This document shows, one piece after another, positions 1-8,285 of a DNA stretch of 64,000 bases. Where the stretch lies: the NCBI GenBank assembly GCA_904063045.1, contig CAJFCJ010000019.1, positions 248,001 through 312,000 on the forward strand, in the 5' to 3' direction. The position numbers and the translations under genes were made by a program. Position 1 is the first letter of the stretch, and each line of letters begins with the position of its first letter. Source of the DNA: Dimorphilus gyrociliatus (lineage: Eukaryota > Animalia > Annelida). The notes beneath the pieces were generated by a model. That model did no database searches. It was given only the letters and a program-made list of their open reading frames with translations, and was not told the DNA's origin.

Positions 1-2668
1 TATATCTTTACAAGTTTTTGGCTCCTCACATTCACACGTATTACAACCATTTTTGTCTTTCTTGTAACCATTTGGGCAGAAAACAGCGCACCTTATCACT
101 GGACAGGTGACCTTACATTGACAAGTTTTACAGCCTCTTTCATCCCGGATATATTCCTGGCCAATAGGACAAGCCATGCATCTGAAAACTGGACAATTTT
201 CGCATTTCACTTGCGAATTGGATTCTACGCAAAATTTATCTCTTGGGCATGTGGCATCTTCACAGGAGTCAGCACACTTGCAAATTTCACATCCAGATTT
301 GCTATCTCTCTTCCATCCAAATTCACAGTACATTTTACAGCGGACAGGTTCGCAAATAGCCCTATTGACACATTTTCCAATTTCATGACAAATACCTCCA
401 TTATCGCAAACTTTGCTTAATATACAATCTTGGTTATTTTTACAGTTTGCTTCTTTACATGCGCGGTGCAAAATACATCTAGCTTCACCATTCTCTTCTA
501 CACAAAAATGTCCAACCTGACATAACATAGCTGCACAGGTAGTTTTTGGTTTAACACAGACAGCATCAGTTGGGCAAGGAGGGACTAAACATGGATGAAC
601 TTTCTCTTCGCAGATTTCTCCAAGTTCACATTTAATATCATCACATGAATTTTTTGGTGGTTTAATATCATGACATTCGCCAATAGGTCCTGGGCATTCA
701 CCATTAGCAAGACAACCACGAGTAATAATCATGCAATTTTGGTCTTTTCTACAATTAGCTTTGACGCAAACTGGGTCAAGAACACATCTAGCTTCACCAT
801 TCTCTTCTACACAAAAATGTCCAACCCGACATAACATAGCGGCACAGGTAGTTTGTTGTTTTACACAAACAGCACTAGTTGGGCAAGGAGGAACTAAACA
901 TGGATGAACTTTTTCTTTGCAATATTCACCAATGTTGCACTTCTTATATTGGCATTTGTTTTTAGGGACACAGCGTGCAATAGGTTTCTTACAAACAAAA
1001 CCAGGAATGCAAATCGATGTTGCTATTTCACAGCTTTCACCTTCTTTACATTTTTTGCAGAGATCGTTTGGTACGCATTTTAAGAATTGCTTGCAGGGTG
1101 CCTTTTTACATACGACAGTTTCAACTTTGCATTCTTCATTTGGTCTACATCTCTCACAAGTTGCCAATTCACATCGTGGATTTTTGTAGCATGGGGCGGT
1201 TACGCATTCGATGTCATCTTCAATGCAAACTTCGCCTGTACCACATTTCTTGTCTCGACAAGACGTAGGTTCTCTACATTTGCATATAGGACATCCGTTT
1301 AATTGTTCAAATCCATTTTCGCAGAACATTTCACACATGTATTTTGCACAGCCGCACGTTTTTGTTTCTTCATCGCAAACTTGGTTTTTAGGGCAATCGG
1401 AGTTTTTGCTGCAAGTTTCTGATTTCACACAACGGGGGTTTTTGTAGCATGGAGCAGTTACACATTGGATATCATCTTCGATACAAGTTTCTCCGGGACC
1501 ACATCTTTTGTCCAAGCAAGACTCTGATTTTCTACATTTGCATATAGGACATCCGTTTAATTGTTCAAATCCATCTTCGCAGAACAGAGTACACATGATT
1601 TTTGAACAGCCGCATGTTTTTGTTTCTTCATCGCAAACTTGGTTTTCAAGACAATCGGAGTTCTTACTACATTTGGGTACTGGTGATGGGTTACATGTGC
1701 AAGTGGGGCATCCATTTTTATCCATAACGTTACCGTGTTCACAAAAGATTGCGCACACGGGTGGACATTCTAATAATAAAGAAAATATTGGTAATTGAAA
1801 CTAATAATATACTAAGAGAATAATTTATACCTTGCTTGACGCATTGAGCAATCATACGACAAGGAGAGTGAGGGAAACAGTTTGGTTCTGGGAGCACTTT
1901 ACAAACAGTTCCTTGTTGACATGTTACAGCAGCACATGATGTTGGTGGTTGCGGTGGTAGAGGAGGAGGAGGACCATTGCATTTACACTCTTCACAGCCG
2001 TTTGATCCCTTTGCGAAACCGTTTAGGCAAAACATCCTACAGGTAACTGGTGGACAACAAGCACAAGTATCACAACCTGCTCTGTCTTTCTTAAATCCTG
2101 TCGTACATGCAATATCGCATTCCAGCGGTTTGCATGTTTTCTCTATTTTCGATGAAAATAATAGTGTAACTTTAGTCACTAATTGTCAAAAAGGTAACTT
2201 TACACACTTACCACATTTAGCTGGCGCATTTTTTTGAACGCTTTCGACACAAGTTTCATCTTCGTTACATTTCATTTCTTTACAATCGAAGGTGGGATGC
2301 TCTGGTTCGACACATGTGTAACCATATCGGCAAATCACTTGGAAAGGATTCGGATATTTATTCACGACACAGACGCTTTTGTGACCAGAACATGGATTTC
2401 TATCACAGGGATTGTCGCAACAAGACGAACAATCTGGACAACCATCCGATTTCAGATTGAGAACTCCGTACTTACAGTTTTCACAATGGTCACTGCAATC
2501 TTTACACCGGCAATCACAAATTCCTGGAGTTTCAGCATCTGGATGGATACCATATAAACAATCTTGTACAGTACATTCTTCACACCGTTCACCAGTCGGG
2601 ATTGATTGAACTTGAGACAGTAGAACTATTGCTGGTACCAGCAGAATAAGTTTTGAAATCTTCATCAT
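1..2668 (-). CDS. Antistasin/follistatin-N-like multi-domain Cys-rich protein, paralog A (3' end outside window)
   Basis: Signal peptide MMKISKLILLVPAIVLLSQVQS. Exons 2668-2212, 2142-1831, 1769-<1 with GT-AG junctions that keep frame. The last exon translated by hand is open to base 1 (~590 codons) with repeated C-x3-4-C-x2-3-C-x2-G-x6-7-GC-x2-C-x-C antistasin motifs. Confidence 0.88.
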
Positions 2669-3379: not shown

Positions 3380-4021
3380 ATGGCTGATGATAAAAGAATC
3401 GTTGTTATCGGAGTTGATGGAAGTGTTCGTTCAGAGCACGCTTTTGATTGTTGGTATTATTACAAACATCTGAACATTTATAAGTAATTATATGTATATA
3501 TCACATTGATTGTCAATAAATTGCACATCTAGGGTATGCTGAACATTTGCACAAAAAAAAGAACTACGTAATTGTCATCCATTCCGTTGAAGTGCATAAT
3601 GTCCATCCTTATCGTAAGTACATAAAGCATTATTACATTAATGATAAGTAATTGACATATTTACAGTTATTAAACCGTAATTTTTATACTTTTCTTATTA
3701 TTTCTAATAGCGTCAGTTTTTGTTTCGCCGGAAGTTATGCAAGCTGAATTCGAAAAGGAAAAGTCCAAGTCAAAGAAGCTGGAAGAGTACTACACCGAGA
3801 GACTTAAGCAAAGGAACATTGAAGGTGAATTTGTAATAAAAAATGGTAAACCTGGAGAAGCGATTGTAGCATTAGCTAATGATATGAAAACCGAAATGAT
3901 CGTTGTTGGAACAAGAGGTCACGGAAAACTAAGGAGAACAATACTTGGTTCAGTAAGTGATTATATCGTTCATCATGCTCATTGCGCAGTTATAACTGTC
4001 AGACCGGATGTTCCTCTTTAA
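3380..4021 (+). CDS. Universal stress protein (UspA family), 3 exons
   Basis: Exons 3380-3449, 3533-3613, 3711-4021 join in frame. N-terminal VVIGVDGS and C-terminal IVVGTRGHGKLRRTILGSVSDYIVHHAHCAV are USP signatures. Confidence 0.93.
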
Positions 4022-4315: not shown

Positions 4316-5942
4316 TTAAAACGCTACAGAAGTGTATTGCGGAGGTGGCGTTGATGGTAGAACCTCTATAGTGTCATATTGTTCAGGTTTTCCTTTCTCG
4401 TCACTTGGATGGATGTAGTAGGGCGGTGGACTGATCCCTTCTTTTATTTGTTTATTACCAGCGTCTTGATGATTGTCTGATTGTCTTACTGTTGCTCTTT
4501 TCTTCATCTGTAGGAGAATATATTATTACTAGGTCACTTATGAATACTATAAAAGATACTTACGTAGTGGCAAGTAAATACTGATATCACAACAGCCACC
4601 AAAATTAAAATTGTAACTGTGATAGCAATGGCAATAATATGATTTCGTTGTAATTTTTTTGTACATTGGCAAGTATTACAGCCGTTTACTTGTTCATACC
4701 CATCTTCGCAGAACGTAGCACACATGAGTTTTGGGCAAAAAATCAAGCATGTTCTTGTTGCTGCATCGCAAACTTGGTTTTCAAGACAATCGAAGTCCTT
4801 GCTGCAAGTTTCTGATTTCACACAACGGGGGTTTTTGTAGCATGGAGCAGTTACACATTGGATATCATCTTCGATACAAGTTTCTCCGGGACCACATCTT
4901 TTGTCCAAGCAAGACTCTGATTTTCTACATTTGCATATAGGACATCCGTTTAATTGTTCAAATCCATCTTCGCAGAACATTTCACACATGTATTTTGCAC
5001 AGCCGCACGTTTTCGTTTCTTCATCGCAAACTTGATTTGTAGGACAATCAGATTTTTTGCTGCAAGTTTCTGATTTTTTACATTGTGGATTTCTATTACA
5101 AGGGGCGGTTTCACATTGAATGTTATCTTCAACACAAATTTCACCTGGACCACATCTTTTTTCCGAACAAGACATTGATTCTCTACATTTGCATATGTTG
5201 CATCCGTTTAATTGTTCAAATCCATTTTCACAGAACATAGTACACATCACGTCTGGGCAGCCACACATTTTCGTTGTTACATCGCAAACTTGGTTTGTAG
5301 GGCAATCTGAGTTCTTGTTACATGTTGACGGTGGCGGTGGGTTACATGTGCAAGTAGGACATCCATTTTTATCCGTAACCTTGCCATATTCACAAAAGAT
5401 TTGGCATACAGGTGGACAAACTGTAAAAATATTATATAATCTGTATAATAATCCACAAATGAAGTATACCGTTTAAACTACTAACCACACTTGGCTGGTA
5501 TGCTATTTTTGAGGCTACCTTCAATACAGGTTTGACCATCGGGGCATTTCACATCTTTACAATCGAAGACGGGATGCTCTGGTTCGACACATGTATAACC
5601 ATATCGGCAAATCACTTGGAAAGGATTCGGATATTTATTCACGACACAGACGCTTTTGTGACCAGAACATGGATTTCTATCACAGGGATTGTCGCAACAA
5701 GACGAACAATCTGGACAACCATCCGATTTCAGATTGAGAACTCCGTACTTACAGTTTTCACAATGGTCACTGCAATCTTTACACCGGCAATCACAAATTC
5801 CTGGAGTTTCAGCATCTGGATGGATACCATATAAACAATCTTGTACAGTACATTCTTCACACCGTTCACCAGTCGGGTCCGAATGTACTTGAGACAATAG
5901 AACTATAGTTGATAACAGTAGAAGCAATTTAGAAATTTTCAT
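4316..5942 (-). CDS. Type I membrane protein with antistasin-repeat ectodomain, paralog B
   Basis: Exons 5942-5486, 5420-4564, 4507-4316 in frame. Signal peptide, four antistasin motifs, TM segment IIAIAITVTILILVAVVISVF, cytoplasmic tail with PPPY and PPQY. Confidence 0.88.
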
Positions 5943-6777
5943 CTTAACTCTACGAGTAAAAATCTCAAACTGAAAGTTTTTAAGCTATGTATAGCTTTAT
6001 GATCAATTTATTATTAACAAGTTCGTACCAAACGGTAACAGGCTCTTATTTCTTATATCTCCGCTTGGTGTCTTTGTTGGCCTATCGTTTGGTTTAAAGA
6101 AAAATAACAACAAGACGTTAGGTTAAAACCAACTTGTGTAGAAAACGGAAGTGAAAATTTGTAACTAAAGCTTCCAAGTGTAGAAAAAAGCAAATAGTCG
6201 TGGTTGACGTCATAAAAATGGAGATGATTATTGTCTACATGAAGGTCAAGGAAAAAACTGCGTAGTAATTTTATATTTATTATAGACTAATGCATTGGTT
6301 ACAAAGCTTAATCGGCGTTTCTAACCATTAGAGCAATTATAAGGGATGTTTTCTCTTTTTATAAGAAAATCATCTATTCATAAATTACTTATATATTTAT
6401 ATAAGGAATAGTTATGCGTACTTTCTTGAAAACTGATCGAAAAGTATGTAAAAGTGTGCAAAACAGTTGTTATTTTATTTGATAATCTGAGAAATTCTAT
6501 AACACACAAACACGAAAAATAGACAGAAAAACTACACTTTTTGTAGTATTTATCGAGTTTTTCAAATTCAAGTTTTCACGAATTAGCTGGTAAAATAGCT
6601 TTCCGTTTTAGATGGTCAAGTATTCGAATATATCGATAAAGGCATTAAAAAAATAGAAAATAGTTTAAATTAAAATTCTCTCTATATAAATGATATTTGG
6701 ATGAGAACTAATTTATAGGTTAAAGTGTCGTTTTTTTTTTTGGGTATAGAAACTTTCTCTCTCTCTCTCTCAAATAT

Positions 6778-7909
6778 CTAGCAAGAAAGTTCTGGTAGCC
6801 CTTTCTTCTTTTCGTCCTCTTCAGAAATTGTTCTAAGAGAGGTTGTAGAAGTATATCTAGGTGGTGGAGTTGCTGGTGGAACACTAACAAAATCAGTTGG
6901 TTCAACCTTTTTCTCTTCATCATTTGGGTAGATGTAATAGGGTGGTGGACATTCCTTTTGGTCTCCAATTGGTTTTTCATTCATAACTCTTTGTTGATTG
7001 GAGACTTGTCTGGCTCTAGCCTTTTTCTTAATCTATACGGAATGATATATGATAATTTGATCTTTGAGTTGTTGTGTTCTACAATCTTGCTAATACTTAC
7101 GCAGTAGCAAGTAATTCCGGTTACACCAACAATCACCAATATTAAGATTACAGCGGAAAGTATTATGGCTCCACGTTTGTGGTGCTTAAAAAATCCGAAA
7201 CAACTGTCGTCATCGTCATCGGTTTGTTCCTCGGGTATAAGAGATTTGGCTGTTAAGATCAAACAATGTATTTGAATTAGCACTGTACATATGTCTACTT
7301 ACCAACGCAGTATGGTTTTTCAACATCTCCATCTTTAAAAATATGACAAGCATGATGTTTTGCGCACTTCACCCTGTGGCAGAGGTGTTTTTCTGCACAT
7401 TTACACATGGGGCAGCCAGAGGGGTTAAAGAGCATACCATATCTACATTTCACGTATTCTCTATTCGAATCTTTATCAAAATGCCTCATTTCCGTTTCCT
7501 TTTTATGCTTATGGGAATCTCTATCTTTTTCATCATCCTGTTCACGTCCTTTCTTGTGGCGATCATGTTCACGCTCTCTTTCATGTTCACGCTCTCTTTC
7601 ATGTTCAGGATGATTCTCAGGTCTGGGCATATGTCCACTACCTTGCTCACTGTGTTTCATAAACCATTTTGAGCCGTGTCTAAAAGAACCATGTCTGCTG
7701 TCGTTATCATCATCGTCATCATCATCGTCATCATGGTCGTCATCCCGGTCATCATCTCTTTCGTGTCTCTCAATTACACGTTCACATCTTGCTGAACAAA
7801 CCGGTAGCTTGCTCGTATCCATCGACGGAGGCAGACCGGGCCTCTTCAAATGCTTTGCCTCAATGGCAACTGCAATCAGTGCCAGTAAAACGAGTAGGGC
7901 GACTTTCAT
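6778..7909 (-). CDS. Type I membrane protein with His/Asp/Glu-rich insert in an antistasin-like domain, paralog C
   Basis: Exons 7909-7303, 7249-7101, 7032-6778 in frame. Signal peptide MKVALLVLLALIAVAIEA, CRYGMLFNPSGCPMCKC, TM AIILSAVILILVIVGVTGI, tail with PPPY and PPRY. Confidence 0.85.
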
Positions 7910-8285
7910 CGTGAGCTTTTAAAAGATTAGTAAATTAAACGATGATAAACTGAATTTTTCCCTACACTGCTGTACCTGTATTTGCAGCACAGAGTCTGAT
8001 CGATTACCGATGCGCTTCTGAAAAACACAATAATTTATTAGCGAAATGCCTGGCGCTGTGGTCGTGATCTCTTTTAAATAATTATTCAAAAACTTCAAGA
8101 TCTTATATTCATATTCATATTTTAGTCTAATAACACAATAAAACAGTCTATATCGATATTATAATATATGCATCTAGGTCTATTTGACAGACAAAAGTTT
8201 CAAAACTGTCAATGCCAACATAAATTAAAGGTAACCATAATACCTAAAAACACTACAGTAGAGAGCTTTCTAAACCTTTGTGCAT

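What the first reader, a model, noticed from the sequence alone, without database searches (positions are those of the whole stretch)
4316..7909. Receptor-like antistasin family: variable ectodomain on a conserved TM + dual-PPxY tail
Seen: paralogs B and C have very different ectodomains but share exon layout (TM exon, phase-0 intron, tail exon) and tail motifs: B SPPPYYIHP...STPPPQYTS, C CPPPYYIYP...ATPPPRYTS. Established: classical antistasins are secreted serine-protease inhibitors; PPxY binds WW domains (NEDD4-family ligases, YAP). Inference: a membrane-tethered protease inhibitor/sensor family coupled to ubiquitin-dependent trafficking or signalling, with exchangeable ectodomains. I do not recognise this architecture as a described family.
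Basis: partly seen in the sequence, partly recalled or inferred. Interest (0 to 1): 0.78.

Follow-up and report, generated by a model that had tools for sequence, protein, structure and literature searches.

The report
Membrane antistasin-like proteins with PPxY tails
Two neighbouring genes of the miniature marine worm Dimorphilus gyrociliatus encode cysteine-rich surface proteins whose short intracellular tail carries two strictly conserved PPxY docking sites, most likely hooks for NEDD4-type ubiquitin ligases: a real, lineage-restricted family, but built on an already well-known plan.

Summary
Genes B (4316-5942) and C (6778-7909), both on the minus strand, encode a signal peptide, a Cys-rich ectodomain, one TM helix, a phase-0 intron directly after the helix, and a tail with two PPxY motifs.

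- **Gene models:** B equals the annotated protein DgyrCDS11316 of Dimorphilus gyrociliatus. The C layout is confirmed by an intron-less, transcript-like contig of a related species, whose exon joins fall where I predicted.
- **Conservation:** six tails from four taxa keep both PPxY cores, although synonymous sites are saturated. The tail is the best-conserved part of C.
- **Paralog A:** it is a giant secreted antistasin-repeat protein and lacks the TM and tail.
- **Distribution:** searches of 1.84 and 5.8 billion proteins found the tail only in close relatives.

WW-domain recruitment (NEDD4-type ligases are present in the genome) is plausible and matches a known class: Comm, PRRG, Shisa/CYYR1, Melan-A. 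The protease-inhibitor half is weak. B's reactive-site positions are Q, T, E and A rather than Arg/Lys. C's Cys-rich domain is below the Pfam cut-off. CRIM1 already shows antistasin-like domains on a membrane protein.

Verdict: a new variant of a known kind, of moderate interest. The scan had not noted this family before.

The parts
5486..5942 (-). Gene B exon 1: signal peptide plus an N-terminal Cys-rich domain (22 Cys); ends in a phase-1 intron.
   Evidence: ORF and splice sites. Identical to residues 1-152 of the annotated protein P0001/DgyrCDS11316. 90.5% DNA identity to exon 1 of gene A.
4564..5420 (-). Gene B exon 2: four antistasin-type domains alternating with a second 6-Cys module, then the TM helix (about 4570-4638); ends in a phase-0 intron.
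   Evidence: Pfam Antistasin E 2.7e-13, four stretches. Matches antistasin 1SKZ at E 1.2e-7. KD maximum 3.11. Equals residues 154-438 of P0001.
4316..4507 (-). Gene B exon 3: 63-aa cytoplasmic tail plus stop codon; PPxY-1 at 4418-4429, PPxY-2 at 4334-4345.
   Evidence: Equals residues 439-501 of P0001. No remnant of the C-type C-terminal extension lies downstream.
7303..7909 (-). Gene C exon 1: signal peptide (7856-7909), Asp/His/Glu-rich low-complexity stretch, then a small 8-Cys module (about 7304-7462) resembling the end of an antistasin domain.
   Evidence: Antistasin 15.8 bits, below cut-off. (E 4e-4 to the B repeat junction). Colinear with residues 1-191 of transcript-derived P0011.
7101..7249 (-). 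Gene C exon 2: acidic juxtamembrane stretch and the TM helix (about 7107-7172), ending in TCYC; followed by a phase-0 intron.
   Evidence: Colinear with residues 193-241 of P0011.
6778..7032 (-). Gene C exon 3: 84-aa cytoplasmic tail plus stop codon; PPxY-1 at 6937-6948, PPxY-2 at 6853-6864, SEEDE acidic cluster, C-terminal GLPELSC (6781-6801).
   Evidence: 75% identical to the P0011 tail and 64% to the L004 tail, with pS about 0.7.
1..2668 (-). Gene A, 5' part (context): a giant secreted antistasin-repeat paralog and apparent donor of B's ectodomain. It continues beyond base 1 and ends without TM or tail.

Best explanation
B and C are type I membrane proteins of Dimorphilus gyrociliatus. They belong to a small family restricted, as far as I can see, to its close relatives. 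A conserved cassette sits under ectodomains that differ greatly: a TM helix ending in Cys, a juxtamembrane Lys/Arg cluster, and a disordered tail with two PPxY motifs. In the C type the tail also has an acidic SEEDE cluster and a C-terminal G[LM]P[EQ]LSC. B carries four antistasin-type domains freshly copied or converted from the neighbouring secreted gene A. C carries an acidic low-complexity stalk plus one small Cys knot. Shown: the gene models, the topology elements, the conservation and purifying selection on the tail, and the presence of WW+HECT ligase genes. Inferred: the two PPxY motifs dock WW domains of NEDD4-family ligases. Lysines of the tail, or of an associated membrane protein, are then ubiquitinated, and the protein with whatever its ectodomain holds is sorted from the surface or Golgi into the endosome-lysosome route. 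That is how Comm, PRRG4, Shisa/CYYR1, NDFIP and Melan-A work. What the ectodomain binds is unknown, and classical trypsin/factor Xa-type inhibition is unlikely.
For: Gene models. B equals the annotated DgyrCDS11316. The C layout is confirmed by the intron-less 1,044-nt contig L006/P0011, whose exon blocks join at the predicted junctions. AlphaFold gives confident helices only for the signal peptide and the TM (pLDDT about 92) and a coil tail. Tail conservation: six tails, 16 invariant columns of 56, including all six defining PPxY columns (hypergeometric 2.5e-4, post hoc). C tail dN/dS is about 0.13 with saturated synonymous sites. The tail is 64-75% identical, against 53% for the Cys-rich part. 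TM plus tail is the only significant similarity between a C-type and a B-type protein (E 3e-13). At least three loci have WW domains next to a HECT domain on the same strand (C4, C9, C7). Analogous systems are documented in PMC5578492, PMC3764795, PMC10531659 and PMC9604169. Sub-threshold hits of TM plus tail go to two PY-tailed single-pass families, MLANA and CYYR1.
Against: There are no binding, localisation or expression data. PPxY also binds non-ligase WW proteins such as YAP, MAGI and dystrophin. Only four closely related taxa are sampled, and three of them are unidentified SRA runs. The C gene model of this genome itself was not found as an annotated protein with the tail, so for C the RNA evidence comes from a relative only. 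B has lost the acidic cluster and the C-terminal motif, so the tail functions of B and C may differ.
Confidence: 0.6

Rival explanations
1. These are membrane-tethered serine-protease inhibitors (functionally like the Kunitz-type HAI-1/HAI-2). Their PPxY tail couples protease capture to ubiquitin-dependent internalisation.
For: B has four bona fide antistasin-type domains that align with the solved factor Xa inhibitor antistasin over a full 10-Cys domain. Ala or Thr at P1 could suit elastase-like enzymes (own knowledge: guamerin has a non-basic P1).
Against: The position aligned to antistasin Arg34 (reactive site; own knowledge, Dunwiddie 1989 as cited in PMC7851590) is Q, T, E or A in B's four domains. 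C and its orthologs lack a complete antistasin domain. CRIM1 carries antistasin-like domains, and its description in PMC11922885 names no inhibitor role. The conserved part of the family is the tail, not the ectodomain.
Confidence: 0.2
2. The PPxY motifs recruit non-ligase WW proteins (YAP/Yorkie, MAGI-type scaffolds or dystrophin-like proteins). The family would then be a signalling or anchoring receptor, not a trafficking adaptor.
For: PRRG4 and PRRG2 tails bind several WW-domain proteins besides NEDD4 (PMC3764795). The genome has 28 WW matches, many of them not next to a HECT domain. The conserved C-terminal LSC could be a PDZ-type ligand (own knowledge, a lead only).
Against: Nothing distinguishes the WW partners in silico. 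The acidic cluster and the juxtamembrane lysines fit sorting signals better (inference).
Confidence: 0.15
3. Artefact: the TM and tail exons belong to separate or non-coding sequence, and their similarity is chance proline-rich composition.
For: The tails are short and proline-rich. One database hit (P0004) was a spurious repeat protein.
Against: B matches the annotated 501-aa protein exactly. A spliced transcript-like contig of a relative joins all three C exons in frame. Exon phases and positions are conserved in a syntenic contig of another relative. dN/dS is about 0.13.
Confidence: 0.03

Closest known systems
Short single-pass PY-motif membrane adaptors: Commissureless, PRRG1-4, Shisa/CYYR1 (STMC6), yeast Rcr1/2
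   Same: Signal or anchor, small Cys-rich or modular ectodomain, one TM helix (often with Cys in or after it) and a disordered tail with two or three [LP]PxY motifs that bind NEDD4-family WW domains and steer trafficking of themselves or partner receptors (PMC5578492, PMC3764795, PMC10531659). An acidic stretch follows the first PY motif here, as in the extended Comm/PRRG4 motif.
   Different: No significant sequence similarity: CYYR1 scores 15.9 bits against a cut-off of 31, and there is no Shisa_N or Gla hit. The ectodomain is antistasin-type, and in B it is large (about 410 aa). The Cys pattern is not the Shisa C*C*CC*CC pattern.
Melan-A/MART-1 (Pfam MLANA)
   Same: A single-pass protein that binds NEDD4 and ITCH and is ubiquitinated for lysosomal sorting (PMC9604169). 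It is the best sub-threshold Pfam hit of B's TM plus tail and ranks 2-3 in the Atlas feature search of a C-type TM plus tail.
   Different: 17.1 bits against a cut-off of 27, and an Atlas score of 0.85, which is a lead only. Melan-A has essentially no Cys-rich ectodomain, and the clusters found are chordate.
[quoted passage not shown]
   Same: A type I membrane protein with four antistasin-like domains and a short (76-aa) cytoplasmic tail (PMC11922885). It appears among the Atlas neighbours of B.
   Different: CRIM1 also has IGFBP and six VWC domains, none of which are found here. The only paper holding both 'CRIM1' and 'PPxY' is a YAP/TAZ review that I did not open, so I have no evidence of a PY motif in the CRIM1 tail. 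Atlas scores are low (0.77; TM 0.2).
Classical secreted antistasins (antistasin, hirustasin and others)
   Same: B's repeats align over a whole 10-Cys antistasin domain of 1SKZ and pass the Pfam cut-off.
   Different: The classical proteins are secreted, have one or two domains and a basic P1. Here the proteins are membrane-anchored, P1 is Q/T/E/A, and there is a cytoplasmic tail.
HAI-1/HAI-2 (SPINT1/2), transmembrane Kunitz inhibitors (own knowledge)
   Same: The idea of a protease-inhibitor module tethered to the cell surface by one TM helix.
   Different: A different inhibitor fold; no Kunitz hit here. Inhibitor function is not supported for B or C.

Membership tests
Antistasin family (Pfam PF02822) | Score above the curated cut-off for the antistasin Cys motif | tested here: met
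   B exon 2: 50.6 bits, E 2.7e-13, four stretches; P0001: 44.3 bits; 1SKZ E 1.2e-7. For C it is NOT met: 15.8 bits against 21.2, and no hit for its ortholog P0011.
Antistasin-type serine-protease inhibitors (functional) | Basic P1 residue at the position of antistasin Arg34 | tested here: not met
   The alignment to 1SKZ places Thr at that position in B domain 2. The four domains have Q, T, E and A there. The Arg34 assignment is from my own knowledge.
PY-motif single-pass adaptors (functional class) | One TM helix with [LP]PxY motifs on the cytoplasmic side, conserved in orthologs | tested here: met
   Signal peptide plus one TM. Two PPxY motifs invariant in six tails of four taxa.
PY-motif single-pass adaptors (functional class) | Physical binding to WW domains of NEDD4-family ligases | not testable with these tools
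   Only the presence of WW+HECT genes in the genome could be shown.
Shisa-like / CYYR1 (STMC6) | Sequence membership (Pfam Shisa_N or CYYR1) and the C*C*CC*CC ectodomain pattern | tested here: not met
   No Shisa_N hit. CYYR1 reaches only 15.9 bits against 31, over TM plus tail of P0011. The Cys spacing read from the sequence differs.
Melan-A (Pfam MLANA) | Score above the cut-off of 27 bits | tested here: not met
   17.1 bits, E 0.0068 on P0001 residues 417-493; Atlas 0.85.
CRIM1 | IGFBP N-terminal domain and VWC repeats alongside antistasin-like domains | tested here: not met
   Antistasin is the only family above its cut-off in B; none is above cut-off in C or P0011.
PRRG (transmembrane Gla proteins) | Gla domain in the ectodomain | tested here: not met
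   No Gla hit in any exon, nor in P0001 or P0011.

The most novel reading that the evidence does not exclude
A Dinophilidae-restricted family in which one conserved cytoplasmic cassette (TM, dual PPxY, acidic cluster, C-terminal LSC) is repeatedly re-equipped with ectodomains copied by gene conversion or duplication from the adjacent giant secreted antistasin-repeat gene. This would create a membrane-tethered, ligase-routed twin of a secreted protein, working as a clearance or feedback receptor for whatever the secreted paralog binds. The different position of the B-type gene relative to Usp in the two genomes, and the within-genome similarity of A and B (91% against 55-61%), leave room for independent origins of the B type in each lineage.
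Probability: 0.2. Interest if true: 0.6.

Novelty: new variant of a known kind. Interest (0 to 1): 0.4.

Why it matters
If the tail really recruits NEDD4-type ligases, this is a clean natural example of how a short trafficking cassette can be combined with unrelated or freshly copied ectodomains to make new surface receptors. It comes from a compact annelid genome that has published RNA-seq and ATAC-seq data (PMC7854359). It also shows that antistasin-type modules, usually read as secreted protease inhibitors, occur on membrane proteins outside CRIM1. That warns against annotating them as anticoagulants or inhibitors by default. The general principle (single-pass PY-motif adaptors) is already established, so the gain is a new family and an evolutionary case, not a new mechanism.

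Tried and rejected
1. Same tail on paralog A: rejected. A ends in a Cys-rich exon and a stop with no TM or PY. Single-sequence and profile searches of the whole genome found only the B and C tails.

2. Wider relatives. A profile of the B and C tails against 1.84 billion representatives gave only B itself, two fragments from Logan assemblies and one spurious repeat protein. The five-tail profile against 5.8 billion proteins gave the same two fragments. That tool's length filter sees only proteins of about 46-147 aa for this query.

3. Survey of antistasin-repeat proteins similar to B: six hits. None has a TM plus PPxY tail, and one has only a C-terminal hydrophobic anchor.

4. Literature searches for antistasin with transmembrane or PPxY found only CRIM1 and unrelated snail loci.

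5. The structure of the C-type protein P0011 was too poor outside the two helices (mean pLDDT 54.5). I ran no fold search, because matches would be meaningless.

6. Pei & Grishin 2012 (PMC3295595) is not held, so the Shisa-like criteria are cited second-hand.

7. The SRA accessions of the relatives were not found in any paper, so those taxa remain unnamed.

They were searched exon by exon, by reference. Full-length sequences were used only where a database returned them (P0001 for B, P0011 for a C ortholog).
Full report
**What is in the sequence**

The window is G000:C19:248001-312000 of a 78-Mb genome. The organism is Dimorphilus gyrociliatus: the protein of gene B is held by NCBI and UniRef as DgyrCDS11316, on a contig of 3,787,408 bases. 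The published median intron of 66 bp (PMC7854359) fits the introns found here.

Both genes lie on the minus strand.

| Gene | Exon 1 | Exon 2 | Exon 3 |
|---|---|---|---|
| B | 5486-5942 | 4564-5420 | 4316-4507 |
| C | 7303-7909 | 7101-7249 | 6778-7032 |

All four introns are GT..AG and 53-68 nt long. In both genes the intron after the TM segment is phase 0 and falls right after TCHY (B) or TCYC (C).

Each product has these elements:
- It starts with a hydrophobic, signal-like segment.
- It has exactly one strongly hydrophobic stretch, with 19-aa Kyte-Doolittle maxima of 3.1 (B) and 3.0 (C).
- It ends in a Cys-free or Cys-poor tail: 63 aa with six Lys in B, 84 aa with ten Lys in C.

B's TM helix is the end of the big antistasin exon; only C has a small TM exon of its own.

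**Are the gene models real?**

- **B.** The three in-frame exon translations plus the split codon (Val) reproduce the 501-aa database protein P0001 residue for residue.
- **C.** Searching exon 1 alone returned P0011, a 322-aa protein encoded as one uninterrupted ORF on a 1,044-nt Logan contig (L006, run SRR30211050).
  - C's exons map to P0011 residues 1-191, 193-241 and 242-322, so the joins are where I predicted them.
  - In DNA the contig aligns to the window in blocks that skip the two introns.
  - This is what a spliced mRNA of a related species looks like, although I could not read the run's library type.
- **Genomic contig of another relative.** L004 (run SRR23372229) has the same exon layout and phases for a C-like and a B-like gene, next to the same Usp gene and an A-like gene.
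- **Structure prediction.** AlphaFold on P0011 is confident only for the signal helix and one TM helix (residues 216-255, pLDDT about 92). It leaves the tail as coil.

**Conservation of the tail**

- Six tails were compared: C, B, L006, the two L004 genes, and fragment P0003 from ERR14224705. They share 16 invariant columns out of 56 gap-free ones.
- The invariant columns include K-K after the membrane, PPPY, and TPPPxYTS. All six defining PPxY columns are invariant (hypergeometric 2.5e-4, a post hoc figure).
- Between the window and L004, synonymous sites are saturated (pS 0.7-0.95; the Usp control has pS 0.69 and dN/dS 0.04). The C tail has pN 0.24 and dN/dS about 0.13.
- The tail is the best-kept part of C. 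It is 64% (L004) and 75% (L006) identical, against 53% for the Cys-rich part and 56-61% for the TM exon.
- Between a C-type and a B-type full-length protein, the only significant alignment is TM end plus tail (E 3e-13).
- C-type tails, and the B-like tail of L004, continue with SLR..EDE.. and end in G[LM]P[EQ]LSC. B of this genome stops right after the second PY motif, and no remnant follows in any frame.

**The ectodomains**

- **B.** Exon 2 holds four antistasin-type domains (Pfam E 2.7e-13). One aligns over a whole 10-Cys domain of the solved antistasin 1SKZ (E 1.2e-7). The residue aligned to antistasin's Arg34 is Thr. By my own knowledge Arg34 is the P1 of the reactive site; the primary paper is cited in PMC7851590. 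The four domains have Q, T, E and A at that position, so a trypsin or factor Xa type of inhibition is not expected.
- **B relative to A.** B's exon 1 and repeats are 82-90% identical in DNA to the start of gene A, and the similarity stops at about 4657, just before the TM codons. In mature exon-1 protein, A and B are 91% identical. Every cross-species pair, and the A-like/B-like pair of L004, is 55-61% identical. This points to recent gene conversion or duplication.
- **A.** This is a very large secreted antistasin-repeat gene; its four sampled pieces hold 5, 2, 8 and 2 Pfam stretches. It ends in a Cys-rich exon and a stop, without TM or tail.
- **C.** The ectodomain is an Asp/His/Glu-rich low-complexity stretch plus an 8-Cys knot. 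The knot resembles only the end of an antistasin domain and the start of the next module (E 4e-4). It is below the Pfam cut-off (15.8 bits against 21.2), and P0011 has no antistasin hit at all.

The phrase 'variable ectodomain on a conserved TM and tail' is therefore right. 'Antistasin family' is fully right only for B.

**Distribution**

- The genome has only these two tails.
- A tail profile read against 1.84 billion representatives found B itself, two Logan fragments and a spurious repeat protein.
- The five-tail profile against 5.8 billion proteins found the same two fragments.
- Proteins similar to B elsewhere are secreted-type antistasin repeats without TM plus PY.
- The family is seen in four diverged but related taxa and nowhere else. 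Short tails evolve fast, so absence further out is weak evidence.

**How it most likely works**

*Shown.* These are type I topology elements with a disordered, Lys-rich tail, two invariant PPxY motifs under purifying selection, and an acidic stretch after the first motif. The genome has at least three loci with WW domains next to a HECT domain on the same strand: C4, two to four WW domains per locus; C9; and C7.

*Inferred.* The two motifs dock WW domains of NEDD4-family ligases, leading to ubiquitination and endosomal or lysosomal sorting of the protein and of what it holds. This is documented for Comm, PRRG4 and PRRG2, Shisa/CYYR1 and Melan-A (PMC5578492, PMC3764795, PMC10531659, PMC9604169).

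*Leads from my own knowledge, not tested.* The SEEDE cluster looks like a casein-kinase-type acidic sorting signal, as in furin. The terminal LSC looks like a PDZ-type ligand.

I put 0.6 on this reading, 0.2 on the tethered-inhibitor reading, 0.15 on non-ligase WW partners, and about 0.03 on artefact.

**Comparison with known families**

- The plan is that of the short single-pass PY-motif adaptors, but no membership test is met.
  - CYYR1 scores 15.9 bits against a cut-off of 31.
  - MLANA scores 17.1 bits against a cut-off of 27.
  - There are no Shisa_N, Gla, VWC or Kunitz hits.
  - The Atlas lists MLANA at 0.85, which is a lead only.
- Membrane proteins with antistasin-like domains are already known. 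CRIM1 has four of them, a TM helix and a 76-residue tail (PMC11922885). It also has IGFBP and VWC domains, which are absent here.
- Literature searches found no paper describing an antistasin-type ectodomain on a PY-motif tail.

**Verdict**

This is a real, selected, lineage-restricted family, and a new variant of a known kind of trafficking adaptor. Interest is moderate (0.4). The most interesting open point is the apparent reuse of the secreted neighbour's ectodomain on the tail cassette.

**Limits**

- No expression or binding data.
- The relatives are unnamed SRA runs.
- No fold search was run on the poor model.

Noticed in passing
window 1-2668 (-) continuing into L003 7573-10000: Gene A is a very large secreted protein made almost entirely of antistasin-type repeats. 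L003 8000-8750 holds five near-identical 150-nt units. It has no TM or tail. It could be a structural Cys-rich matrix or cocoon-type protein rather than an inhibitor (compare the leech cocoon protein cited in PMC7851590).
   Followed up: partly
window 4657-5942 against 1-2668: B's exon 1 and repeats are 82-90% identical in DNA to the 5' part of A (91% in mature exon-1 protein), far more than any cross-species pair (55-58%). This indicates recent gene conversion or duplication. The similarity ends right at the first TM codons.
   Followed up: yes
window 7968-8008 (-): A 42-nt block just upstream of gene C is 88% identical to the 5' end of the transcript-like contig L006. That is better conserved than the coding blocks (72-82%). 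The 58 nt between this block and the ATG (7910-7967) have no counterpart in L006, so they are either a 5'UTR intron or an indel.
   Followed up: no
window 3380-4021 (+); L004 1279-2006 (-): A universal-stress-protein (Usp) gene with short introns, 90% identical in its last exon to that of the relative. It lies between B and A here, but between the C-like and B-like genes in L004. Either there was a local rearrangement or the B-type gene arose independently in each lineage.
   Followed up: partly
window 6781-6825 (-): C-type tails end in an SEEDE acidic cluster and an invariant G[LM]P[EQ]LSC C-terminus in four sequences. Gene B of this genome has lost both.
   Followed up: partly
window 7463-7800 (-): C's ectodomain contains an extreme Asp run and His/Glu/Arg repeats. 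The L006 ortholog keeps an acidic stretch, while the L004 ortholog has a Gly/Ser/Tyr-rich stretch instead. This is a fast-changing low-complexity stalk.
   Followed up: no
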